Of a DNA stretch of 64,000 nt, positions 5,608 through 58,795 are shown piece by piece. This DNA comes from Octopus sinensis (taxonomy: Eukaryota). The DNA lies in NCBI RefSeq assembly GCF_006345805.1, contig NC_043001.1, positions 60,822,001 to 60,886,000 on the forward strand. The letters are read 5' to 3'. Under the pieces are notes generated by a model. It was not told the origin of the DNA. It saw only the letters and a program-made list of their open reading frames with translations, and did not search any database. How positions within the stretch are numbered: position 1 is the stretch's first letter; each line of letters begins with the position of its first letter. The position numbers and the translations under genes were made by a program.

Positions 5608-5977
5608 GCAGATGTGGCTGTGTGGTAAGGAGTTTGCTTCAAAACCCACGGTTCCGTGTAAAGTTCTACAGCGTGGCACTTTGGGAGAGTGTCTTCTTAT
5701 ATAGCTTTGGTCCGACCAAAGCCTTGTGAGTGGAGTTTGCAGATGAATGTTTGTGTGTGTGCATGTGTGTGTGTGTGTGTTTCCCAGTACCGCTTGACAA
5801 CATGTGTGTTTACATCCCCGTAACTTATCAGCTCAGCAAGAAAGAACGATAGATTGAGTACCAGATTTAGCAAAATACAAGTACTGTGGATTCATTCGAC
5901 TAAATTTTCTTCAAAGTGGTGCTCCAGCATGGTCGAAGTCTAGTAGCGGAAACAAGTATAAGATAAAAGATAAAAGA
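5608..5977 (+). mobile_element. tRNA-derived SINE, family A, near full length
   Basis: gtggctgtgtggtaag head (A-box-like), ccgaccaaagccttgtgagtgg, internal (TG)n, gtggtgctccagcatgg, gaaacaagta and (gataaaa) tail. The same motifs recur at 10256, 32855 and 44243. Confidence 0.85.
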
Positions 5978-8952: not shown

Positions 8953-10255
8953 CTGATACATCGTAGATTGGTTAGTTGGAGCGATCGATATATGTTTTAT
9001 AAAATGCATCGTAGTTATACGTTCTACAGTACTACACCGTGACCATGAAAATCAATTTGAGGCCATTTACAATAAGTCATTGATTCTTATCCTTGTTTTA
9101 TACTTTATCTGCTCTTGCTAGTTACTGTCATTGCTTTACTTTGATGTTGTCTATAAAATCATTGATGTGTACTCTTCCAGGTTGTATTTACTCCACAGTA
9201 GTATAAGAAATCTATTTCCATTCTTCATATTGTTTTTCTTTGATATTTTCTGTGTGGAGAGCAAAAAGATTTGATGATTACATTGAATCGATAATAGTCT
9301 GCAAGACATGATGTGCATGTTCGTATATTTTCTGATTTGCATCATTGATTATCTTCAAACAGATAGTCCCATGATCATGCACATACATACCAATATATAC
9401 ATATACACACACATACATACTGATGCTACATACACATATATATGTCTGTATGTTATATGTATATGTGTATGTATGTATGTATATGGCATAAGTATCGGTC
9501 TCCATATCTTGTTTTGTTTTGCGTTGTTTCCTGTGTTATTGGATTTTGAGGGTCATGCACGCTTTGTTTATGTGACTGGATACATTCATGTGGGTTTCAT
9601 AGCCAAAGTGTTCAGAAATATTAGAAATAAACCGAACAAATAGTATATTATTGTTTTGAAATAACTCTTATTTATTTGCAAAAATGGAAAAAAGAAAAAC
9701 TGAACGTAATATATCTCTTCTAACAAAAGTCAATAATTTATCGACCAGTCAAAACTTACCTTACTTTCACGTAGCTAACATCACATACATGGAAGCAATG
9801 TAGTAATATATCACCATTCCTAAGTTTTGTCTTTTTCCCCGAAATTCTCTTTTGGCAAAACATTAACAGTAAAAGAACTCTGATTTTCAATTCGATTGTA
9901 AGCATGAAGGTGTAAACGTCTTCGTGCTCACTATTATACTGAGCATATAAACACAATATTTTGGCAGCGGTTTATCATACATCTACAAAAGGGAGCATTT
10001 GCAATGCATTCTACAACACAGCACAAAACAAAACTAGATCCATAAACATTAGTAGAAAATATAGCCTTAAATTACATAATTCCCTTTGAAACAGATGACT
10101 GAAGGTGGATGAAATATTCTCAGAGCGAAATAGAGCTAAAACAACAACGGACATCCAGTACACAAGACAATACTGGGATTTATGACGTATATAGCAAGTT
10201 AAATTCAAAATCTACTCATACAGTGAATTTAACTATGTTTATACACATAGGCTCA

Positions 10256-10646
10256 GGTGTGGCTGTGTGCTTAGAAGATTTGTTACCAACCACATGCCTC
10301 TTGTTTCAGTCCAACTATGTGTCAGCTTCGTCAAGGCTGTTCTGCTATAGCTTCGGGCCGACCTAAGTCTTGTGAGTAGATTTGGTAAACGGAAACTGAA
10401 AGAAACCCATCGTATATATATGTGTGCGTGTGTGTGTTAGAGCCTGTATTTGTCACCCCTACCATTGCTTGACAACTGATGTTGGTATGTTTACGTCCCC
10501 GTAACTTAGAAGTTCGGCCAAAGAGATCGATAGAATAAGTAATAAGCTTACAAAGAAAAAGTCTTGAGTTCGACTTCTTCGAGTAAAATCCCTTAAGGTG
10601 GTGCTCCAGCATGGCTGTAGTCAAATGACTGAACCAAGTGAAAAAA
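10256..10646 (+). mobile_element. tRNA-derived SINE, family A
   Basis: caggtgtggctgtgtg head, gggccgacc, cggaaactgaaagaaacccatcg, ggtggtgctccagcatggc and gtcaaatgactgaa. Confidence 0.85.
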
Positions 10647-10844: not shown

Positions 10845-11571
10845 ACGTCTCCATTGAGTGCAACCGTACGATATTTCATCTTTTCCTCTTTAGAGATAGA
10901 TCACGTGGTTGCAATATATGCAGTTTGGACTTCAGACAACTTACAAGACGGTGTCATGTACAAAGCACACATTTACCAGTGGTTTTCACACTTTAGGAAT
11001 GGTCAATTGTCTCTTGAAGACCATTCTCGTTCACGGACACCGTTGACATACGGAACGACTGAAAACATCACGAAAATTCATAAAGTGAACTTGGAGGGCC
11101 GTGGTCGAACAATTGATAATTTTTTTTTATATGAGTCGTGTGTCCTGGAGCTCCTGCCACCGAATTTTGAGCGAAAAATTCCGAATGAAAAGAGTTGCAG
11201 CAAAATTTGTGCTTCGCTTGCTCACAGAAGATCAAAAGTGGTCACGACTGAATGCGTGTTGTGAACTGAAAGAACAGTTGGAAGTTGTTCTTCCTCTCTG
11301 TGACTTTGTTTTTTTTTTACTAACGAAAAAGTTAGTTATTCAAGGAATACGTTTTGCAGATGTGGAAGAGGAGAAGAAAAAACGACGGAGGCGTTAAAAG
11401 GCATCGCTTCGCAAGGGTTCCAGTACTGCTTCATGCAGCAGGAAATGCGTGGATTGATGCATCGCTTTAAATTGATAATACTTCGCAGGCAATAAACGTG
11501 TAAACATGTTAAACTAAATGAATAAAATATTATTGCAAAATTCCAAAATTTCTTTTGGGTACCCTCTCCTA
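10845..11571 (+). mobile_element. Internally deleted mariner remnant
   Basis: ORFs 10854-11264 and 11101-11397 give HTH-like YQWFSHFRNGQLSLED and MKRVAAKFVLRLLTEDQK (WVPRLL equivalent). They then jump to PLCDF..GIRFADVEE (YSPDL region). The right end is gggtaccctctcc-TA. Confidence 0.8.
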
Positions 11572-26702: not shown

Positions 26703-26770
<68 letters not shown>

Positions 26771-26771
26771 G

Positions 26772-27650
26772 AGTGAGAGAGCAGTGCATGCCATCAAAGT
26801 GACACTGGGGTAAAATATACGAAGCCCAGCATACCCATCATGACTACCCGTCTGATAAGGGTACACCAGGCACATGCATCAAAATCATATGTGCGCGACA
26901 TGGTGATCGCATATCAAGATAAACAGCACATGACCTTGCAGGTGGGGCCCAGTTAGAATTTTCTTCAGGTCGAGTAGCCCATCCTGCTCAAAAATTACAC
27001 ACCTTTCGTAATAATAATATTTACTTAAGATGTAATCTAAAAGCAAACTATTATTTTGATCTTATGTCTAGCATAACCTGTAGTGACAGATACGAATATT
27101 TACACTTCTTGGTATATTGATACATTTCTTGTTTATTTTACTAGGGTCAATGTTCCTCTGAAAATGAGAATAACTTCAAATAGAATCTCACTAGGCGCAC
27201 ACAAAAGAGAATTACATAAAATAAAAGAAACCAGAAGAAATAACACGAATTACTTGCGCATCAATATTTTTCTATTATACTATATTTAAAAGATACCCCT
27301 GAGTAATACATCAAGATAAACAGCGCATAAACTATTGTTTAAGGATGTTGAACGAAACATCAATGTTTTCAGAGGTGAATTTATTCCAACCCCAAAAAAT
27401 CCCTCTCAACTCAAGGCTATGATGTTCCGCCACTACTTCTGCACGTGATCAGAGATGCACATATCGTCAGCCACAAAGGGACATATTCAACTGGTTACGG
27501 TCAAACAACTGACAAGCAAATCTGTGGTATTGAGCAGAATATTTGCTGTAGCCCATCTTTTATACCAAGACAAAACAATGTACATGATAGCACTTCCAAT
27601 GAGTTATGATCAGAAGCCATGAGAATCACTGCCTGGTACTGCATCAGGGC
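26772..27650. mobile_element. Unclassified interspersed repeat flanked by (ATT)n, interrupted by the 311-bp insertion
   Basis: gagtgagagagcagtgcatgccatcaaagtgacactgggg...gcctggtactgcatcagggc. I recall this as a common Octopus repeat but did not verify it. Confidence 0.5.
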
Positions 27651-27676
27651 AATTATTATTAGTATTATAATCATAA

Positions 27677-27731
<55 letters not shown>

Positions 27732-27750
27732 CATCATCATCATCATCACT

Positions 27751-27834
<84 letters not shown>

Positions 27835-27856
27835 ATTATTATTATTATTATTATTC

Positions 27857-28575
27857 TATGTTTGACTTTTGCTTTATATTTGTACAAGTTGGCTCCAAGT
27901 CTCACCCAGAGACCTCAAGAGACAACAGGTTGGAAGTTCGTGATGTTGTTATGCCTAGTGTGCCACATATTTGGTTTTGTATTTAGTGTTGTACTAGTGA
28001 ATTATTTAAAAAAAAAACAAAGAAAAAAACGAAAATTATGTTTGTTTTAAAACCTGTGATTACATAGAAAGTATTTTGCGTAGGATATGAGCAGTTCCCA
28101 TGAGCACTATCTTTTGAATTTCTGCTATTTTGGGGTTTCCTGGTATCTGAGTTAGGTAGCGATCAGCCCCTTTTGCTATCATTCCCAGGACACTTATGAC
28201 AACAGGTATTGTTTTAGACTTCAGGTTCCACATTTTGATGATTTCTATTTCAAGATCTTTATATTTGCTGTTTTTTGGTAGGTCTTGACAGATACGTTTA
28301 TATTGATTGGGACAGTCATATCAATGAGGAGACATGTTCTTTGTTTGAAGTCTTTCAATATGATGTCTGGCTAATTGCATCTATCTTTCTGTCAGTTCTA
28401 GAGGAGTGAGATGTGGTCATTTCCAAGCACTGGAGGTGGTTTGTGTTCCCACCAGTTTTTTTCATGGGGCAAATCCAGGTTTTTGCAGATTAACCAGTGG
28501 ATATATTGTGCAGCTCTATCATGCCTGTTGAGATACTCTGTAGGCGCTAGAAGACTGCACTTGGAGACAACATGA
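27857..28575 (-). mobile_element. R4/Dong-like REL LINE 3' fragment
   Basis: HVVSKCSLLAPTEYLNRHDRAAQYIHWLICK (CCHC region), PDIILKDFKQRTCLLIDMTVP (PD..D REL endonuclease) and IQKIVLMGTAHILRKILSM*. The UTR ends in (AAT)n. Confidence 0.85.
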
Positions 28576-28589
28576 TCAATGATTATCAT

Positions 28590-29236
28590 TATTATTTTTT
28601 TTTCTTTTCTTCTTTCAAATTTGCTTCCATTTCTTGCCGAGTGTCTTCCCGACTCCTAGGGCAAACAAACTCATAGTATACATTGGTAGACCGTTAAACT
28701 AAACTCAATAGTTCGTTCATTTTTTTAAGTTAAATTAAAATACATGGGTAGTAATAATTCTCACACCGACAATGCTCTTCTCAATACGTGTGATGTACCA
28801 GTTAAGACAATCTTTTGCACTTCTTGCAGGGATGGTAAGCCAGGGATCATTCTCATATCATTTTCGGTTCCCTTTTTGATCATTCCTAGTGCTCCTACGA
28901 TCACTGGTATTGTAACCGCCTTGAGATGCCACATTTTCTCAATTTCAATGAGTAGGTCTTTATATTTTCTGAGCTTATCAAACTCTTTCGCTGAGATATT
29001 ATGATCACAGGGGATGCTCATGTCGATCAATAAGCAAACTTTATTGTTTTGGTCTTTCACAACAATATCTGTTTTATTGGCCTTGATGGTTCGGTCTGTA
29101 TGTACTGGAAAATCCCACAGAATCGTTACATTTTCTCCTTCAGTTACAGCCTCAGGGTGGTGATTATACCACTTGTCGGCAGTTTTGATATTGTAATGCC
29201 GACTTATTAGCCAGTGTAGATATTGGCTAACTCTGT
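28590..29236 (-). mobile_element. R4/Dong-like REL LINE 3' fragment, second family
   Basis: ORF 28761-29429 gives RHDRVSQYLHW...LWDFPVHTDRTIKANKTDIVV...LIDMSIPCD...KYKDL...IVGALG...VLRRALSV*, followed by a 3' UTR and A/(AAT) tail. Confidence 0.9.
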
Positions 29237-29254
29237 CATGTCTTAATTTATACT

Positions 29255-29401
<147 letters not shown>

Positions 29402-29417
29402 TATTATTATTATTATT

Positions 29418-30510
29418 CCTTCGTAACACATTGTAGGTAAAAATGCACCGGAGTCTTTAGTCATCTATTAAGTCACAATAAGGATCTCAGACAGATAATA
29501 CTTTCTTTAAGATGTGCGCTGTGCTCAATAAGGCTTCATCAATCTTGCATAGGAATTCCAGTTGCCTTAAGAAGTCTTGAAGTTTCAATGGAATTGAGCC
29601 CAACATACCGTTCACCACTGGTATCACTTTTACGTTACCCTCTCACATTCTATACAGTCTTGTCATATCTACTTTCAGTTCAGAGTACTTGGCGACTTTT
29701 TCAACCTCTTTACTCATAACATTCATGTCATTTCGTATGGTTAGATTACGTTTCTCACAGTATTTGTCTCTCTTATTCAGTATGACACAATCCGGTCGAC
29801 GGTGTTCGATTACACGATCCGTTTGAAAATTATAGCCCCAGAGTATAGTTAATTTTCTATGTTCCTGCATAACATTACTTGGTACATGCTTATACCAGTT
29901 CTTTGTTACTTCATATTGGTATTTACGGCACAAGAGCCAATAAAGATACACACACAATTTATCGTGGCGGCGCTTCCTTTCATTTTATGCAAGGCTCTCA
30001 CAGACACGTAGCAAGTGCGTCACATTTTCCACACTCTTTTCACAGAATCTGCCTTTGTGAGTGTCAGAAGATTTATAGATGTTATACTTTACTGAACTGG
30101 TAGCGAGAGCCTGGTCTTGTGAAGCAATGATCAATCTTTCGGTTGTTACGCTTCAAATCACCTCGTTCAAGCCAATCCCTCGATGCTGTATTAACGTCAC
30201 GTTAAGGATAATACATGTTAAGGATAATTCCATTCAAACTGTCCATGCATTCTCATTTCCAGAAGGTCTTTTCCCTTCTTAGTCTATCTTTTCAATTATA
30301 TCAAGATTTCCAATCTTTCCAGTTCTTGCTAACCTGGGCTATTGCTGTGAATGGTACATTTTGTTTGGGCCTAAAGACTGGCGTCGCACTTTGTTTTATA
30401 GTGATTTTAGCTGTCATTTTTTGTTTCAACCCTTCGGCCTCATTTGAACCTTTGACCGATCCAACTATATTTCCACAAAGAACACTTATGAGAGCATCGC
30501 ACGATTAGAA
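29418..30510 (-). mobile_element. R4/Dong-like REL LINE 3' fragment, third family
   Basis: TERLIIASQDQALATSSVK, WLLCRKY, QTDRVIEHRRPDCVIL, KYSELKV and STAHILKKVLSV*. Confidence 0.85.
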
Positions 30511-36109: not shown

Positions 36110-36310
36110 TGTGTGTGTGCATTTGTGCCTGCGTTTGTCCTCCTACGTCCCCGTTACTTATCAGTTCAGTAAAATAGACCAATAGAATAAGTACATTCTT
36201 GCAAAGAATAAATTTTGGTGTCGAGTTCTTCAACTGAAAAACACTTTAAGGTGGTGCTCCAGCATGTCCGCCATCAAATGACTGAAGCAAGTAAAGATGT
36301 AAAAGAATAC
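36110..36310 (+). mobile_element. SINE family A, 3' half
   Basis: tacgtccccgttactta, gaccaatagaataagtac, aggtggtgctccagcatg and aaatgactgaagcaagtaaa. Confidence 0.75.
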
Positions 36311-39659: not shown

Positions 39660-39800
39660 ATAACTTAACGGTTCGGTAAAAATGACCGATAGAATAAGTA
39701 CTAGATTTACAAACAATAAATCCTGGGGTCGATTTGTTCGACTGAAGGCGGTGTCCCAGCATGACTGCAGTCAAATGACTGAAACAAATAACGGAATGAA
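39660..39800 (+). mobile_element. SINE family A, 3' fragment
   Basis: gaccgatagaataagtactag...ggggtcgatttgttcgactgaaggcggtgtcccagcatg..gcagtcaaatgactgaaac. Confidence 0.8.
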
Positions 39801-41697: not shown

Positions 41698-41843
<146 letters not shown>

Positions 41844-42502
41844 TTAATCAATATAGGGTGGCAAAAAAATTTTGTAGAATTTTTTTGCCACCAGCGGCCT
41901 AGTGGGAAAAAATTAAATAGTCATAGACCATTTTTAAGTTCAACATCAACAATCAAGGAACGGCCATAATAGGCCATTCACCCACTAGAAATAACAGCCA
42001 AAGCTTCAACCGCAGATAAAAATTAATTCCGTAAACCAGGAGAAAATTTAAAAAACATTTACCCTGTAATTTCTTATACGATTAAACAGCAGATGAAACG
42101 GTGCATCGTATAAGAAATTACAGGGTAAATGTTTTTTAAATTTTCTCCTGGTTTACGGAATTAATTTTTATTTGCGGTTGAAGCTTTGGCTGTTATTTCT
42201 AGTGGGTGAATGGCCTATTATGGCCGTTCCTTGATTGTTGATGTTGAACTTAAAAATGGTCTATGACTATTTAATTTTTTCCCACTAGGCCGCTGGTGGC
42301 AAAAAAATTCTACAAAATTTTTTTTGCCACCCTATATTGATTAATTATGAATTTTCTGGTTAATTCCGTAATGGAATCGACGGCTTATATTTATTTGCTG
42401 CCGATAAATTTGGCGCGAGTGCGACGATTTGAAAATTTTAGGTCAGATATTACCTTGGCAGGGTCGGAAATGCCTCGTGAAAATATCTGTCCGACTTGGG
42501 CT

Positions 42503-42609
42503 ATTTCTTACTGAAGAATCTGAGGGCCTATGGAAGATTGGCTTGATTTAATTTAATCAGGTTAGTTTACCATTAAACAGCAGATGAAACGGTGCATAGT
42601 ATAAGAAAT
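42503..42609 (+). ncRNA. Type I hammerhead ribozyme 1
   Basis: Stem I atttctta/taagaaat, CTGAAGA at 42511-17, stem II atctg/cagat, GAAAC, stem III acggtgcatagt and GTA cleavage after 42601. Confidence 0.85.
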
Positions 42610-42994
42610 TACAGGGTAAACGTTTTTTAAATTTTCTCCTGGTTTACGGAATTAATTTTTATTTGCGGTTGAAGCTTTGGCTGTTATTTCTAGTGGGTGA
42701 ATGGCCTATTATGGCCGTTCCTTGATTGTTGATGTTGAACTTAAAAATGGTCTATGACTATTTAATTTTTTCCCACTAGGCCGCTGGTGGCAAAAAAATT
42801 CTACAAAATTTTTTTTTGCCACCCTATATTGATTAATTATGAATTTTCTGGTTAATTCCGTAATGAATCGACGGCTTATATTTATTTGCTGCCGATAAAT
42901 TTGGCGCGAGTGCGACGATTTGAAAATTTTAGGTCAGATATTACCTTGGCAGGGTCGGAAATGCCTCGTGAAAATATCTGTTCCGACTTGGGCT

Positions 42995-43101
42995 ATTTCT
43001 TACTGAAGAATCTGAGGGCCTATGGAAGATTGGCTTGATTTAATTTAATCAGGTTAGTTTACCATTAAACAGCAGATGAAACGGTGCATAGTATAAGAAA
43101 T
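42995..43101 (+). ncRNA. Type I hammerhead ribozyme 2
   Basis: Same motif, with CTGAAGA at 43003-09 and cleavage after 43093. Confidence 0.85.
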
Positions 43102-43486
43102 TACAGGGTAAATGTTTTTTAAATTTTCTCCTGGTTTACGGAATTAATTTTTATTTGCGGTTGAAGCTTTGGCTGTTATTTCTAGTGGGTGAATGGCCTA
43201 TTATGGCCGTTCCTTGATTGTTGATGTTGAACTTAAAAATGGTCTATGACTATTTAATTTTTTCCCACTAGGCCGCTGGTGGCAAAAAAATTCTACAAAA
43301 TTTTTTTTGCCACCCTATATTGATTAATTATGAATTTTCTGGTTAATTCCGTAATGGAATCGACGGCTTATATTTATTTGCTGCCGATAAATTTGGCGCG
43401 AGTGCGACGATTTGAAAATTTTAGGTCAGATATTACCTTGGCAGGGTCGGAAATGCCTCGTGAAAATATCTGTTCCGACTTGGGCT

Positions 43487-43592
43487 ATTTCTTACTGAAG
43501 AATCTGAGGGCCTATGGAAGATTGGCTTGATTTAATTTAATCAGGTTAGTTTACCATTAACAGCAGATGAAACGGTGCATAGTATAAGAAAT
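43487..43592 (+). ncRNA. Type I hammerhead ribozyme 3
   Basis: Same motif, with CTGAAGA at 43495-501 and cleavage after 43584. Confidence 0.85.
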
Positions 43593-43979
43593 TACAGGGT
43601 AAATGTTTTTTAATTTTCTCCTGGTTTACGGAATTAATTTTTATTTGCGGTTGAAGCTTGGCTGTTATTTCTTTCTAGTGGGTGAATGGCCTATTATGGC
43701 CGTTCCTTGATTGTTGATGTTGAACTTAAAAATGGTCTATGACTATTTAATTTTTTCCCACTAGGCCGCTGGTGGCAAAAAAATTCTACAAAATTTTTTT
43801 TGCCACCCTATATTGATTAATTATGAATTTTCTGGTTAATTCCGTAATGGAATCGACGGCTTATATTATTTTTGCTGCCGATAAATTGGCGCGAGTGCGA
43901 CGATTTGAAAATTTTAGGTCAGATATTACCTTGGCAGGGTCGGAAATGCCTCGTGAAAATATCTGTTCCGACTTGGGCT

Positions 43980-44086
43980 ATTTCTTACTGAAGAATCTGA
44001 GGGCCTATGGAAGATTGGCTTGATTTAATTTAATCAGGTTAGTTTACCATTAAACAGCAGATGAAACGGTGCATCGTATAAGAAAT
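43980..44086 (+). ncRNA. Type I hammerhead ribozyme 4 (best stem III)
   Basis: Same motif, with CTGAAGA at 43988-94, a near-palindromic stem III acggtgcatcgt and cleavage after 44078. Confidence 0.9.
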
Positions 44087-44206
44087 TACAGGGTAAATGT
44101 TTTTTAAATTTTCTCCTGGTTTACGGAATTAATTTTTATTTGCGGTTGAAGCTTTGGCTGTTATTTCTAGTGGGTGAATGGCCTATTTTGGCCGTTCCTT
44201 GATTGT

Positions 44207-44240
<34 letters not shown>

Positions 44241-44242
44241 GA

Positions 44243-44633
44243 GCAGGTGCGGCTGTGTGGTATGTAGCTTATTAATCAACCACATGGTTCTGGGTTCAGT
44301 CCCACTGCCGTGGCTCTTTGGGCAAGTATCTTCTACTATAGTCTTGAGCCGACCAAATACTTGTGACTGGATTTGGTAGACAGAAGCAGAAAGAAGCCCG
44401 TCGTATATATATATACATATATATGTGTGTGTTTGTGAGTCTGTGTTTGTCCCCCAGCATCGCTTGACAACCGATGCTGATGTATTTATGTCCCCATAAA
44501 CTACAGGTTCGGCAAAATAGACCGATAGAATAAGTACTAGGCTTACAAAGAATAAGACCTGGGATCGATTTGCTCGACTAAAGGAGGTGCTCCAGCATGG
44601 CCGCAGTCAAATGACTGAAACAAGTAAAAAACA
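44243..44633 (+). mobile_element. tRNA-derived SINE, family A, full length
   Basis: caggtgcggctgtgtggta (A box), ggttcagtccc (B-box-like), ccgaccaaa and gaggtgctccagcatggccgcagtcaaatgactgaaacaagtaaa. Confidence 0.9.
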
Positions 44634-44667
<34 letters not shown>

Positions 44668-44757
44668 CCCCCCCCCCCAAAAAAAACGAAGAAAAACAGA
44701 AAACAACGAGGACGTGGTACATGTAAAGTATTAGCAGGTATATATGTAAACGATAGG

Positions 44758-44910
44758 CTTCTTTCTGTTTCCTTTTACCAAATGAACTCACAAGGATTTG
44801 GTTGGCTCGAAGCTATAGTAGAAGACACTAGCCAACGGTTCCACGCAGTGTGGCTGAGGCCGGTACCATATAGTTGGGGATAAACGTCTTACCATATAGC
44901 AACGCCTGTG
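44758..44910 (-). mobile_element. SINE family A, 5' part, minus strand
   Basis: The reverse complement contains gtgtcttctactatagcttcgagccaaccaaatccttgtgagt. Confidence 0.7.
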
Positions 44911-55879: not shown

Positions 55880-56900
55880 TTCTATGTACCCTGCCCTCCC
55901 TAGCAGTGATAACGTCCTTCCAGACTAAATCTGGGTCAGAACAGTAACCATGCTTGTGAACGCACTCAAATTCTTCTCTATCTCGAGTTCCGGACCGAAC
56001 CAGATTCCTAGCATCCTAACCGGACTTTCTGTCTTAACATCCCACAATGTTATTGGAAGGTATCGACTTGCCACTTCAAGTGCCGAGTTGCAAGCCGATT
56101 GATTTATCCTGGTTAATTTTTCATGTTGCCACTGCTTCGCATCTTCATACATAACGCTGATGCAGTTCATCAACAGCTCAGATCACGCGGGATGCTTGCA
56201 ATCTTCGCACCTATGGCTCAACAGCCAACACATACAAAAACTGAGACAGGGAACATTTTTGTCGAACAGAGCGCTCAATGTCGAATGGTTTCGAAAAGAA
56301 ACCGTTCAACCGGACGTTAGACTCGATGTTGCTGTACAAAGGAGCGCTCCAGCTTCGGAAAGTCGGGCCCAACCCAGCCGCTCCGAGGACCGCCGACAGG
56401 TACTGATGGTCAACCCTATTGAACGCTTTAGATTGGTCTAAATATACCAGTGCTCCATCTTTGCCAGACATTTTACCCACCCGCTCTAAGGTGTAGCGTA
56501 TGAGGTGGTGATTATTGTGAATCGTCCTGCCGGGGATGGCGCAAGTTTGCCCATGCCCAACAAGTCTGTCCACGACCAGCACTAACCTCTTTGCTAGCAC
56601 CTTGGCCAAAATCTTTACCCCCGTGTTTAACAGAGTTATGGGCCTAAAGTTACAATAATGATTCCCTTGCTAGAGTCCTTTCTGATCAACGTCACCACCC
56701 TCCGGCACGCAGCCTTGGGAATTCCTTCAATCTGCTGCCCATTGGCATAGACGCTGGCCAGTAGGTGCCCGAACAAGTCTGGCATACTTTGAAAAACTTG
56801 TAAGGTAGGCAGACCATCATGTTCCGGCTACCTGTCTCTGCAGCACTCGTACTTCATGATTTCCTCTGCTGTGATCGGTCCTTCACCGTACTCAGCCTTG
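55880..56900 (-). mobile_element. Tx1-clade LINE RT fragment
   Basis: ORF 56211-56609 gives KVLAKRL...QTCAIPGRTIHNN...LDQSKAFNRVDHQYL. Upstream lies RPITLLNT (minus strand, ~56620-56645). Confidence 0.9.
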
Positions 56901-57606: not shown

Positions 57607-58795
57607 CAGGGGTAGAGCAAAATAATGGAAATACCTTAAAATTTTAAGCAAATTATCTTAATATGGGGTAGGACCGCCTTTGGAATGTATTACAACTTAA
57701 ATTCTACGAGCTATAGACTAGAAGAAAGTTTGAATTGTTTCCAAAGGAACTTTCGTCAATTCTTCAGCTAAAACATTCTCCTTTTCATGTAGTGGTGTGG
57801 TGGCCAGATAAGATTTTGAACTTCAATAGAATGTTCCTCGTGCCATTCAGTAACAACCTTAGCTGCATGAATTGGTGTATTATTATCCTGAAAGATTACG
57901 TTTACCACACGGAATAGTTCCGAAACCATAGGATAAATTTAATTAGATAAAATGCTTAAATATTCTTGACTATGAATTTTGCCATGAAAGGAAAATATTG
58001 GGCCGGCGGATTCCCAAGACATAGCTCCCTAGATCATCACAGATGCTCCTCCATGTTTAACAGTTAGAAGGAGGCAGTCTTGGTCAAATGCTTCTTTTGG
58101 TTGTCTTCAGACATATACTCGGCCAGTGGTCGCAAGTAAAGTAAAGGATGGCTCGACCGAGAAAATAACATTCTTCTACTGCTCTAGGGACCAATTCTGT
58201 ATATTTCTACTCCACACTAAACGCTTTGCAACGTTTGTTTTTGAAAGTAGTCGTTTTCTGATTGCAGCCCTCACGTGAAATATGGCTTAGTGCATCTCCC
58301 GGCGAAAAGCTTTTGTGGAAACTGGGTTCTCGAGGTTGTCATTAACCTCTGCAATAATTTTGAGAGCTGTACTTTTGTGATCCTTCCTAACAATTCGCGT
58401 AAGAATCCGACGGTCCCGATCTGAAAGTTTTGGTTTTCTTCCGGAGTTTTGTTTCGACGAGGAGGATTTTTTCCCTCTTTCTCAAAGGCTATAATTACTT
58501 TCGAGACAGTACTCGTTGATACACTAAACATTTCTGTTGTTTTCGTTACGCTAGAGCATGCCATTCCACTGTCAACGATTTGACATCTTTGAAAGTCCGA
58601 TAGATCTGTCATTTTAATGAATTTAAATTACCTTTTTCTGATGTTATCTTAAAAGAAACAGCAATTTTAGCAAAACATATTAAGCAACACTAATAAATAA
58701 TAAAACATAAAAATATACAAGCTTTTGACGGTTTTATAGATATTTCAAAATTATGATATTATGACGTTAGGTGTTTCCAATATTTTGTCCAACCC

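What the first reader, a model, noticed from the sequence alone, without database searches (positions are those of the whole stretch)
41844..44210. Tandem hammerhead-ribozyme array: candidate cephalopod retrozyme/circRNA system with a ~491-nt monomer
Seen in sequence: four complete type I hammerheads are spaced 491-494 nt apart, each with a perfect 8-bp stem I (ATTTCTTA/TAAGAAAT), an intact CUGAAGA...GAAA core and a GUA site. Established: tandem type I hammerhead repeats define non-LTR retrozymes (described in coral, mussel and axolotl), whose multimeric transcripts self-cleave into monomers that circularise. Inference: this is a young, possibly active family. Its monomer is larger than the ~150-400 nt I recall for described animal retrozymes, and I know of no cephalopod description, though I could not search. 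Unit differences are mostly homopolymer indels that may be long-read errors.
Basis: partly seen in the sequence, partly recalled or inferred. Interest (0 to 1): 0.95.

Follow-up and report, generated by a model that had tools for sequence, protein, structure and literature searches.

The report
Tandem hammerhead-ribozyme repeat array (retrozyme)
A non-coding 492-bp repeat, present 4.3 times in a row in octopus-like DNA, carries in each unit a motif with the full catalytic core of a self-cutting hammerhead RNA, so it is most likely one more member of the known "retrozyme" class of small mobile elements rather than something new in kind.

Summary
A 492-bp tandem array lies at 42077-44210 (4.3 units, 98% alike). 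It holds four complete type I hammerhead motifs: 8-bp helix I, CUGAAGA core, GAAAC, GUA site. Predicted cuts fall after 42601, 43093, 43584 and 44078. A loose descriptor finds only these four in 64 kb, against 0.057 expected by chance.

- Helix II is a 68-nt arm closed by A10.1-U11.1. No Rfam hammerhead model, and no model built from four validated retrozyme ribozymes, recognises the motif.
- The array is preceded by an inverted, 5'-truncated 240-nt copy (41843-42082).
- The whole insertion sits inside a (TA)n microsatellite. These last two features are described for Penelope-like element (PLE) insertions.

The unit is non-coding, 36% GC and strongly self-paired (z = -5). Helix III has a palindromic loop. 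One predicted dimer transcript folds as a double hammerhead.

Best reading: a non-LTR retrozyme of the known animal kind, probably mobilised by a PLE. The monomer size is not exceptional, since published families span 51-972 bp. Cleavage, circular RNA, copy number and covariation could not be tested, because no other copy was reachable. I rate it a new member of a known kind, of moderate interest.

The parts
41700..41844 (.). (TA)n microsatellite on the left of the insertion; the target tract
   Evidence: Tandem Repeats Finder, period 2, 74.5 copies
41843..42082 (-). Inverted, 5'-truncated partial copy. It is the reverse complement of monomer positions 1-236, plus the last 6 nt (ATCGTA) of the preceding unit.
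   Evidence: BLAST: monomer 1-236 matches 42076-41843 at 98.3%. Inverted repeat I1: 41863-42082 against 42105-42324, 220 nt with one mismatch and a 22-nt spacer. Junction views.
42083..42104 (+). 22-nt loop of the palindrome (monomer positions 465-486, containing GAUGAAAC). This is the true start of the direct array. The segment 42077-42082 (TACGAT) can be assigned either to the inverted copy or to monomer TACCAT, and looks like microhomology at a template switch.
42077..44210 (+). Direct tandem array, 4.3 units of 491-494 bp. Unit boundaries at the predicted cleavage sites: 42111-42601, 42602-43093, 43094-43584, 43585-44078, and a partial unit 44079-44210 that ends at monomer position 132.
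42503..42609 (+). Hammerhead motif 1 (type I). Helix I is ATTTCTTA/TAAGAAAT. Core CTGAAGA is at 42511. The helix II arm is 42518-42585. GAAAC follows, then helix III ACGGTGCATAGT (A variant, with a G.A mismatch). Predicted cut is after GTA at 42601.
42995..43101 (+). Hammerhead motif 2 (A variant); predicted cut after 43093
43487..43592 (+). Hammerhead motif 3 (A variant, with a 1-nt deletion in an internal loop of the helix II arm); predicted cut after 43584
43980..44086 (+). Hammerhead motif 4 (C variant). Helix III ACGGTGCATCGT forms 4 bp with a palindromic UGCA loop. Predicted cut after 44078.
42105..42118 (+). Incomplete fifth site (ATCGTA|TAAGAAAT) with no CUGAAGA core upstream; not a complete ribozyme
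42602..43093 (+). Reference monomer as it would be released by two cuts (492 nt). It is 36% GC, has no ORF above 74 codons stop-to-stop in any frame, and has MFE -143.1 kcal/mol (z = -5.0).
42295..42331 (+). Internal 13-bp A/U-rich hairpin of each unit (GGTGGCAAAAAAA...TTTTTTTGCCACC); also at 42786, 43278 and 43771, and inverted at 41857
44209..44238 (.). (TA)n on the right of the insertion. The same tract continues beyond a SINE at 44635-44664.

Best explanation
This is one genomic insertion of a non-autonomous, non-LTR retrozyme: a 492-nt non-coding unit repeated head to tail, each unit carrying a type I hammerhead.

Proposed cycle (all steps inferred, none shown):
1. The array is transcribed as a multimer. 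No promoter was identified.
2. Each hammerhead cuts 3' of GUA. It does so either alone or, more likely, as a double hammerhead in which the palindromic helix III strands of two neighbouring units pair with each other.
3. The cuts release 491-494-nt RNAs with 5'-OH and 2',3'-cyclic phosphate ends.
4. A host tRNA ligase (RtcB type) circularises them.
5. The circle, or an uncleaved multimer, is copied more than once around by the reverse transcriptase of an autonomous element.
6. The cDNA is integrated by target-primed reverse transcription.

The insertion footprint points to a Penelope-like element (PLE) as the helper. There is an inverted 5'-truncated copy abutting the 5' end of the tandem. Both outer ends lie in a (TA)n microsatellite. 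Both array ends fall at arbitrary monomer positions (about 465 and 132), not at the cleavage site.

Shown: the motif, its non-random nature, the array and insertion anatomy, the lack of coding capacity, and the predicted folding. Inferred: cleavage, circularisation, the reverse-transcription template and the helper.
For: Motif:
- The complete core CUGANGA / GAAAY / RUH and three helices occur four times in register with the repeat.
- It is far beyond chance: 0 of 300 shuffled windows and 0 of 20,000 shuffled monomers at the observed stringency.
- The GUA site and a non-G-C pair at the base of helix II both have precedent in the experimentally self-cleaving axolotl retrozyme Ax353 / HHR_Amex2.

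Folding:
- The hammerhead fold lies within 1.5-3 kcal/mol of the MFE of the 107-nt domain.
- Helix III is a short stem with a palindromic UGCA loop, as described for metazoan type I hammerheads that act as dimers.
- The C-variant strand self-pairs over 12 bp (-17.5 kcal/mol).
- The MFE of the cis dimer transcript 43487-44086 is a double hammerhead, with helix I formed between unit n and unit n+1 and an extended helix III.

Retrozyme hallmarks:
- Tandem units, 36% GC, no ORF.
- The plus-strand monomer is strongly self-paired (z = -5.0), and the circular fold is 61% paired.

PLE-type footprint:
- The inverted 5'-truncated copy, partial tandem and (TA)n target match the description of PLE insertions in PMC8557442.
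- Published work argues that animal retrozymes are PLE-dependent.
Against: - No Rfam hammerhead family matches, even at E<=10.
- A covariance model built from four validated retrozyme hammerheads does not find the motif either.
- Helix II is a 68-nt arm rather than about 4 bp plus a loop.
- The 10.1-11.1 pair is A-U, whereas G-C is described as highly conserved.
- No loop 1 / loop 2 contact can be recognised.
- Three of the four complete motifs carry a G.A mismatch in helix III, and their dimer transcripts are predicted to fold otherwise.
- Only one locus is available. There is no other copy in the window, in the metagenome, viral or prokaryote collections, or through ORF look-ups. Copy number, mobility and covariation are therefore untested.
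- No PLE gene lies in the window.
- A SINE sits in the same (TA)n tract. LINE-type twin priming could therefore give the same inverted-plus-direct footprint.
Confidence: 0.7

Rival explanations
1. Decayed relic. The repeat descends from a ribozyme-bearing element, but the hammerhead no longer cleaves. The cause would be the A-U pair at 10.1-11.1, the very long helix II, or the helix III mismatch. The array would then be an ordinary minisatellite that grew by unequal crossing-over and makes no circular RNA.
For: No covariance model recognises the motif. G10.1-C11.1 is absent. Three of four motifs have a weakened helix III and a non-hammerhead predicted dimer fold. PLE-type hammerheads themselves cleave poorly in vitro. 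Local amplification by unequal crossing-over is the model favoured in the 2026 preprint.
Against: Every invariant core position is intact in all four copies. Units are 97-99% identical, so there has been little time for decay. The helix II arm, helix I and the palindromic helix III loop are all well formed. Helix II extensions are tolerated in hammerheads: type II forms are open at helix II and aptazymes are fused there (own knowledge, not tested here).
Confidence: 0.17
2. Part of an autonomous Penelope-like element. On this reading the units are tandem pseudo-LTRs of a heavily 5'-truncated PLE insertion, not a separate non-autonomous family.
For: The inverted 5'-truncated copy, partial tandem and (TA)n target are described for PLE insertions. 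PLE terminal repeats carry type I hammerheads with a larger-than-usual helix II and a palindromic helix III.
Against: There are more than four consecutive 492-bp units with no RT or GIY-YIG coding sequence between or beside them. PLE bodies are 3-4 kb. PLE mini-hammerheads lack a real helix III and have a short helix I, whereas this motif has an 8-bp helix I and a 2-4-bp helix III.
Confidence: 0.08
3. Chance resemblance, or an assembly artefact. Either an ordinary AT-rich minisatellite happens to contain hammerhead-like strings, or the palindrome and unit differences are products of long-read assembly.
For: The palindrome is nearly perfect (219 of 220). Most unit differences are homopolymer indels typical of long-read error. 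Covariance models are silent.
Against: Shuffle tests give 0.057 loose hits per 64 kb and none at the observed stringency. The motif is in register with the repeat, and the folding z-scores are -5.0 for the monomer and -4.0 for the ribozyme domain. An artefact would explain the palindrome at most, not the ribozyme array.
Confidence: 0.03

Closest known systems
Metazoan non-LTR retrozymes with type I hammerheads (coral Amil224, mussel Mg353, axolotl Ax330/Ax353; Cervera & de la Pena 2020, PMC7229834)
   Same: Head-to-tail repeats of a few hundred bp, one type I hammerhead per unit, low GC, no ORF, LTR, PBS or PPT, and a highly self-paired monomer. The CUGANGA/GAAAC/RUH core is shared. A short helix III with a palindromic loop implies dimeric action. 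A GUA cleavage site also occurs in Ax353.
   Different: Helix II here is a 68-nt, roughly 24-bp arm instead of 4 bp plus a 5-6-nt loop. The 10.1-11.1 pair is A-U. Helix I is 8 bp with no recognisable loop 1 / loop 2 contacts. The unit shows no sequence similarity to those elements, and covariance models built from them do not detect it. The host is an octopus-like mollusc. Expression and cleavage are untested.
Penelope-like elements: insertion architecture and hammerheads in the pseudo-LTRs (Cervera & de la Pena 2014, PMC4209133; Craig et al. 2021, PMC8557442)
   Same: Partial tandem preceded by an inverted 5'-truncated copy. Insertion into a (TA)n microsatellite. Type I hammerhead with a larger-than-usual helix II and a palindromic helix III.
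   Different: No RT or GIY-YIG ORF is present. No 30-40-bp 'tail' was recognised. [quoted passage not shown] The (TA)n bias is documented for Naiad elements, which lack canonical hammerheads.
Classical hammerhead satellites (newt satellite 2, Schistosoma Sm-alpha, cave-cricket pDo500), now regarded as retrozymes
   Same: Tandem satellite-like units transcribed into multimers that self-cleave, often as double hammerheads because helix III is weak.
   Different: Those ribozymes are compact and match Rfam Hammerhead_1. This one does not.
Plant LTR retrozymes (Cervera et al. 2016, PMC4918200)
   Same: Non-autonomous retroelements whose transcripts are cut by hammerheads and circularised.
   Different: Plant elements carry type III hammerheads inside LTRs, have PBS and PPT sites, have GC above 55%, and are thought to be mobilised by Gypsy elements. 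None of this applies here.

Membership tests
Hammerhead ribozyme, type I | Conserved catalytic core: C3-U4-G5-A6-N7-G8-A9, G12-A13-A14, the A15.1-U16.1 pair, and H17 (not G) at the cleavage site | tested here: met
   CUGAAGA ... GAAAC ... GUA| is present in all four units. It meets the CUGANGA/GAAAY/RUH rule used in PMC7229834.
Hammerhead ribozyme, type I | Three helices around the core, with helix I open-ended | tested here: met
   Helix I has 8 Watson-Crick bp. Helix II has 5 bp at its base plus an extended arm. Helix III has 2 or 4 bp. The fold energy is -27.6/-29.2 against an MFE of -30.7 kcal/mol.
Hammerhead ribozyme, type I | G10.1-C11.1 pair at the base of helix II (highly conserved, not absolute) | tested here: not met
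   The pair is A-U here. There is precedent for a non-G-C base: the axolotl HHR_Amex2 has a U.U mismatch and still cleaves.
Hammerhead ribozyme, type I | Recognition by curated covariance models (Rfam Hammerhead families) | tested here: not met
   No hit at gathering score or at E<=10 with lax filters. An ad hoc model built from four validated retrozyme hammerheads also misses it. The 68-nt helix II is the obvious cause, but this was not proven.
Hammerhead ribozyme, type I | Helices supported by compensatory changes among homologues | not testable with these tools
   The four copies are identical in the helices apart from one helix III position. No diverged copy could be retrieved.
Hammerhead ribozyme, type I | Site-specific self-cleavage | not testable with these tools
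   This needs in vitro transcription.
Metazoan non-LTR retrozyme | Short tandem repeats (about 150-450 bp; 51-972 bp in the 2026 survey), each with a type I hammerhead | tested here: met
   4.3 units of 492 bp, with four complete motifs in register (published ranges).
Metazoan non-LTR retrozyme | Low GC (<45-50%), non-coding, no LTR/PBS/PPT | tested here: met
   GC is 36%. The longest stop-to-stop frame is 74 codons, with at least 7 stops per unit in every frame. The 66-aa ORF has no homologue.
Metazoan non-LTR retrozyme | Highly self-paired monomer RNA | tested here: met
   MFE is -143.1 kcal/mol against -112.9 +/- 6.0 for shuffles, z = -5.0. The circular fold is 61% paired.
Metazoan non-LTR retrozyme | Expressed as linear and circular monomer RNA; dispersed multi-copy family | not testable with these tools
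   No transcriptome and no whole genome were available. There is only one locus in the window.
Penelope-like-element-type insertion (helper inferred) | Partial tandem with an inverted 5'-truncated copy immediately upstream | tested here: met
   The inverted copy 41843-42082 abuts the direct array across a 22-nt loop. The feature is described.
Penelope-like-element-type insertion (helper inferred) | Insertion bias for microsatellites such as (TA)n | tested here: met
   (TA)n lies on both outer ends. However, a SINE sits in the same tract, so the tract may be a general target for target-primed reverse transcription.
Penelope-like-element-type insertion (helper inferred) | Homology of the unit to a PLE pseudo-LTR, and presence of PLEs in the genome | not testable with these tools
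   There is no PLE ORF in the window and the source genome could not be searched. Naiad PLEs are reported in Octopus species.
Penelope-like-element-type insertion (helper inferred) | 30-40-bp 'tail' extension at one end | tested here: inconclusive
   No extra non-repeat segment is seen at either outer junction. The flanking microsatellite could hide one.

The most novel reading that the evidence does not exclude
The 68-nt helix II arm with an A-U closing pair may mark a distinct, functional hammerhead subclass that the Rfam models systematically miss. It could be widespread in cephalopods and other molluscs. On this reading, the locus would also be a rare intact footprint of a circular or multimeric ribozyme RNA integrated by a Penelope-like element. 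The evidence for that would be array ends at arbitrary monomer positions, a snap-back inverted copy whose junction lies inside the ribozyme, and a (TA)n target. This would be structural evidence, so far missing from the literature, for the PLE-retrozyme partnership in invertebrates. A side possibility is that the 236-bp perfect hairpin gives dsRNA that feeds siRNA or ADAR pathways against the family.
Probability: 0.2. Interest if true: 0.55.

Novelty: new member of a known kind. Interest (0 to 1): 0.35.

Why it matters
Retrozymes are an abundant source of small circular RNAs in animals, and how they move is unresolved. If this array is active, it would do three things:
- It would add cephalopods to the hosts.
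- It would show that standard covariance-model annotation misses hammerheads with a long helix II, so genome-wide counts would be underestimates.
- It would offer an insertion whose anatomy (inverted 5'-truncated copy, microsatellite target, ends away from the cleavage site) supports mobilisation by Penelope-like elements from a circular or multimeric template.

It does not open a new category. The ribozyme class, the element class and the proposed helper are all described.

Tried and rejected
- Rfam scans: the whole window at gathering score and the region at E<=10 gave no ribozyme family. The only strong hit, MIR1319 at 63 bits (below its gathering score of 116.6), is just the palindrome at 42034-42153.
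- Ad hoc covariance model: built from the coral, mussel and two axolotl retrozyme hammerheads published in the NAR 2020 supplement. Searched with filters off, it returned only noise at 7-9 bits and did not find the motif.
- Other copies in the window: none.
- Metagenome scan with CTGAAGAATCTG-N50-70-CAGATGAAAC: 22 loci, all chance matches in unrelated, mostly coding, DNA, with no homology to the monomer.
- Viral collection, 20-mer scan: nothing.
- Prokaryote genomes, 20-mer scan: three bare 20-mer coincidences.
- The unit's 66-aa ORF as a handle to other copies: not on record and no homologue.
- Coding function: rejected, since every frame has at least 7 stops per unit.
- Ribozyme on the minus strand: none found by the descriptor or by Rfam.
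- Helitron-type origin: considered because of the TA target. No 5'-TC or CTRR-3' ends were seen at the junctions.
- Host identification from a neighbouring TE ORF: ambiguous. Octopus sinensis is at 72% and shrimps at about 65%. It was settled better by DNA: the SINE matches an O. sinensis contig at 81% and another repeat matches it at 95.5%.
Full report
**1. Observation**

The region was read directly. Tandem Repeats Finder reports an array at 42077-44210 with period 492, 4.3 copies and 98% matches. The repeat finder gives start-to-start spacings of 491-493.

The string ATTTCTTACTGAAGA occurs at 42503, 42995, 43487 and 43980. GTA|TAAGAAAT occurs at 42108, 42599, 43091, 43582 and 44076. There are therefore four complete motifs. 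Each reads: helix I 5' strand AUUUCUUA, core CUGAAGA, helix II, GAAAC, helix III, GUA, then helix I 3' strand UAAGAAAU. Predicted cuts fall after 42601, 43093, 43584 and 44078. Three monomers of 492, 491 and 494 nt would be released.

My own descriptor required helix I >=4 bp, helix II >=3 bp with up to 100 nt between the core boxes, helix III >=2 bp and H17 not G. It finds only these four hits in the whole window on both strands. Dinucleotide-preserving shuffles of the window give 0.057 loose hits per window and none in 300 at the observed stringency. Shuffled monomers give 10 loose, 1 intermediate and 0 strict hits in 20,000. The motif is not a chance product.

**2.

(a) The motif is atypical.
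- Between A9 and G12 lie 68 nt.
- They fold into a 5-bp base (AUCUG/CAGAU, so 10.1-11.1 is A-U) followed by internal loops and a further 19 bp. The arm alone has -24.4 kcal/mol.
- No Rfam hammerhead family matches at gathering score or at E<=10 with lax filters.
- A covariance model built from the four experimentally validated retrozyme hammerheads printed in the NAR 2020 supplement does not find it either.

(b) The first 240 nt of the reported interval (41843-42082) are an inverted partial copy.
- It is the reverse complement of monomer positions 1-236 plus the last six bases of the preceding unit.
- It joins the direct array across a 22-nt loop (42083-42104, monomer 465-486) that contains the GAUGAAAC box.
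- The six bases TACGAT at 42077-42082 fit both the inverted copy (exactly) and the direct unit (TACCAT, one mismatch). This looks like microhomology at a template switch.

(c) The whole insertion lies in a (TA)n tract.
- The tract is at 41700-41844 on the left and 44209-44238 on the right.
- The outer ends fall at monomer positions of about 238 (inverted copy) and 132 (direct array), each sharing AT with the microsatellite.
- A SINE (44239-44634) sits in the same tract, which resumes at 44635-44664.

**3. Properties of the unit**

- It is non-coding. The longest ATG ORF is 66 aa. The longest stop-to-stop frame is 74 codons, and every frame has at least 7 stops per unit. The 66-aa product has no exact record and no homologue among 5.8 billion proteins.
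- GC content is 36%.
- The plus-strand monomer folds at -143.1 kcal/mol against -112.9 +/- 6.0 for shuffles, z = -5.0. The minus strand gives z = -3.7. As a circle it is 61% paired.
- The hammerhead fold of the 107-nt domain costs only 1.5 kcal/mol (C variant) to 3.1 kcal/mol (A variant) relative to its MFE.

Helix III comes in two variants.
- ACGGUGCAUCGU occurs at the site after 44078, and also at the incomplete site at 42108. It forms 4 bp with a palindromic UGCA loop.
- ACGGUGCAUAGU occurs at the three inner sites and has a G.A mismatch.
- The C-variant strand pairs with itself over all 12 positions (-17.5 kcal/mol). The A variant pairs over 6 positions (-7.5 kcal/mol).
- The predicted MFE of the cis dimer transcript 43487-44086 is a double hammerhead. 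Helix I forms between the 5' strand of one unit and the 3' strand of the next. Helix II is intact, and an extended helix III joins the two copies.
- The two A/A dimer transcripts are predicted to pair their helix II arms with each other instead.

These are predictions only. They suggest that the C form is the functional one and that the ribozyme works as a dimer, as described for newt, axolotl and PLE hammerheads.

**4. Comparison with the literature**

Retrozyme features:
- PMC7229834 defines metazoan non-LTR retrozymes as short tandem repeats (150-450 bp) of low GC. They carry type I hammerheads, lack LTR, PBS and PPT, and are expressed as highly self-paired linear and circular RNAs of about 170-400 nt. 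Circularisation is attributed to a tRNA ligase, and PLEs are the suspected helper.
- Its supplement shows that Ax353 cuts after GUA and that all four validated ribozymes share GAAAC.
- HHR_Amex2 has a U.U mismatch at the base of helix II and still cleaves, better as a dimer.
- PMC4209133 states that most metazoan type I hammerheads have a 1-2-bp helix III capped by a small palindromic loop, and that PLE hammerheads have a larger-than-usual helix II. It also states that G10.1-C11.1 is highly conserved. That feature is not met here.

PLE link:
- PMC8557442 describes PLE insertions as partial tandems often preceded by an inverted 5'-truncated copy. It reports a strong bias for microsatellites, (TA)n in Naiads, and reports Naiads in Octopus species.
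- A 2026 preprint (10.64898/2026.07.22.740005) argues from vertebrate data that retrozymes are non-autonomous PLE derivatives. It gives family consensus lengths of 51-972 bp. The 492-nt unit is therefore not exceptional.
- Neither that preprint nor the NAR 2020 paper mentions inverted copies or microsatellite targets for retrozyme arrays. The footprint seen here is a small new piece of support for the PLE link.

Cephalopods:
- The only hammerhead mentions found in the library are the Naiad paper and the giant squid genome paper, which counts 235 Rfam Hammerhead_1 hits without analysis.

**5. Host**

- A neighbouring TE ORF has its best named relative in Octopus sinensis (72%), but shrimps are close at about 65%.
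- DNA evidence is clearer. The SINE next to the array matches a copy in an O. sinensis contig at 81% over 371 nt. Window 26704-26993 matches the same contig at 95.5% over 290 nt.
- The window therefore comes from an octopod or a close relative.

**6. Mechanism and rivals**

The best-supported reading (confidence 0.7) is a non-LTR retrozyme insertion. Multimeric transcripts would be cut at GUA by hammerheads, probably dimeric, then ligated into circles and copied more than once around by a helper reverse transcriptase. Integration would be by target-primed reverse transcription into (TA)n.

Two features support a circular or multimeric template and a PLE-like helper:
- The array ends lie away from the cleavage site.
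- There is a snap-back or twin-priming type inverted copy.

Every step after the DNA anatomy is inference.

Rivals:
- An inactive relic amplified as a minisatellite (0.17).
- Tandem pseudo-LTRs of a truncated autonomous PLE (0.08).
- Chance, or an assembly artefact (0.03).
- LINE-type twin priming cannot be excluded as the source of the inverted copy, since a SINE used the same tract.

**7. Verdict**

What is unusual is the long helix II arm, which hides the ribozyme from standard models, and the clean PLE-like footprint. What is missing is any evidence of cleavage, circles, copy number or covariation. None could be obtained, because no other copy was reachable.

I rate it a new member of a known kind, interest 0.35.

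Noticed in passing
window 44239-44634 (with (TA)n at 44209-44238 and 44635-44664): A roughly 396-bp SINE is inserted in the same (TA)n tract as the ribozyme array. Other copies or fragments lie at 10254-10645 (74%), 5608-5961 (65%), 39670-39791 (86%), 36164-36295 and 44738-44876 (minus strand). It matches an Octopus sinensis contig (L023 4694-5062) at 81%. The tract looks like a hot spot for retroposition.
   Followed up: partly
window 42034-42153: Rfam MIR1319 microRNA-precursor match at 63.3 bits, E = 4e-11, below its gathering score of 116.6. It is only the perfect palindrome at the inverted/direct junction, not a microRNA gene.
   Followed up: yes
window 41843-42343: The inverted copy plus the first direct unit form a near-perfect hairpin with arms of about 236 bp and a 22-nt loop. 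If transcribed it would give long dsRNA, a potential siRNA or ADAR substrate. This is speculation and was not tested.
   Followed up: no
window 28761-29429 (-): ORF with a low-complexity N-terminus and a conserved 164-aa C-terminal domain that has no Pfam match. It has 91 relatives at E<=1e-10 in invertebrate assemblies. Named ones are Octopus sinensis LOC115230721 (72%) and Penaeus species (about 65%). It is probably the tail of a widespread retrotransposon ORF.
   Followed up: partly
window 26704-26993 and 27335-27859: These stretches match the Octopus sinensis contig VCDQ01003308.1 (L023) at 95.5% and 81.6%. They are a shared repeat family next to long ATT/TTA microsatellites.
   Followed up: no
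window 56211-56609 (-), 58271-58612 (-), 10854-11264 (+): A reverse-transcriptase fragment (Pfam RVT_1, 24.6 bits, below the cut-off) and two ORFs that look like transposase fragments by eye but have no Pfam match. No Penelope-like RT or GIY-YIG ORF was seen anywhere in the window.
   Followed up: partly
whole window: The window is extremely rich in microsatellites. Tandem Repeats Finder gives 85 rows, mostly (TA)n, (AC)n, (ATT)n, (GAA)n and (TATG)n. Many mechanical ORFs are just translated repeats.
   Followed up: no
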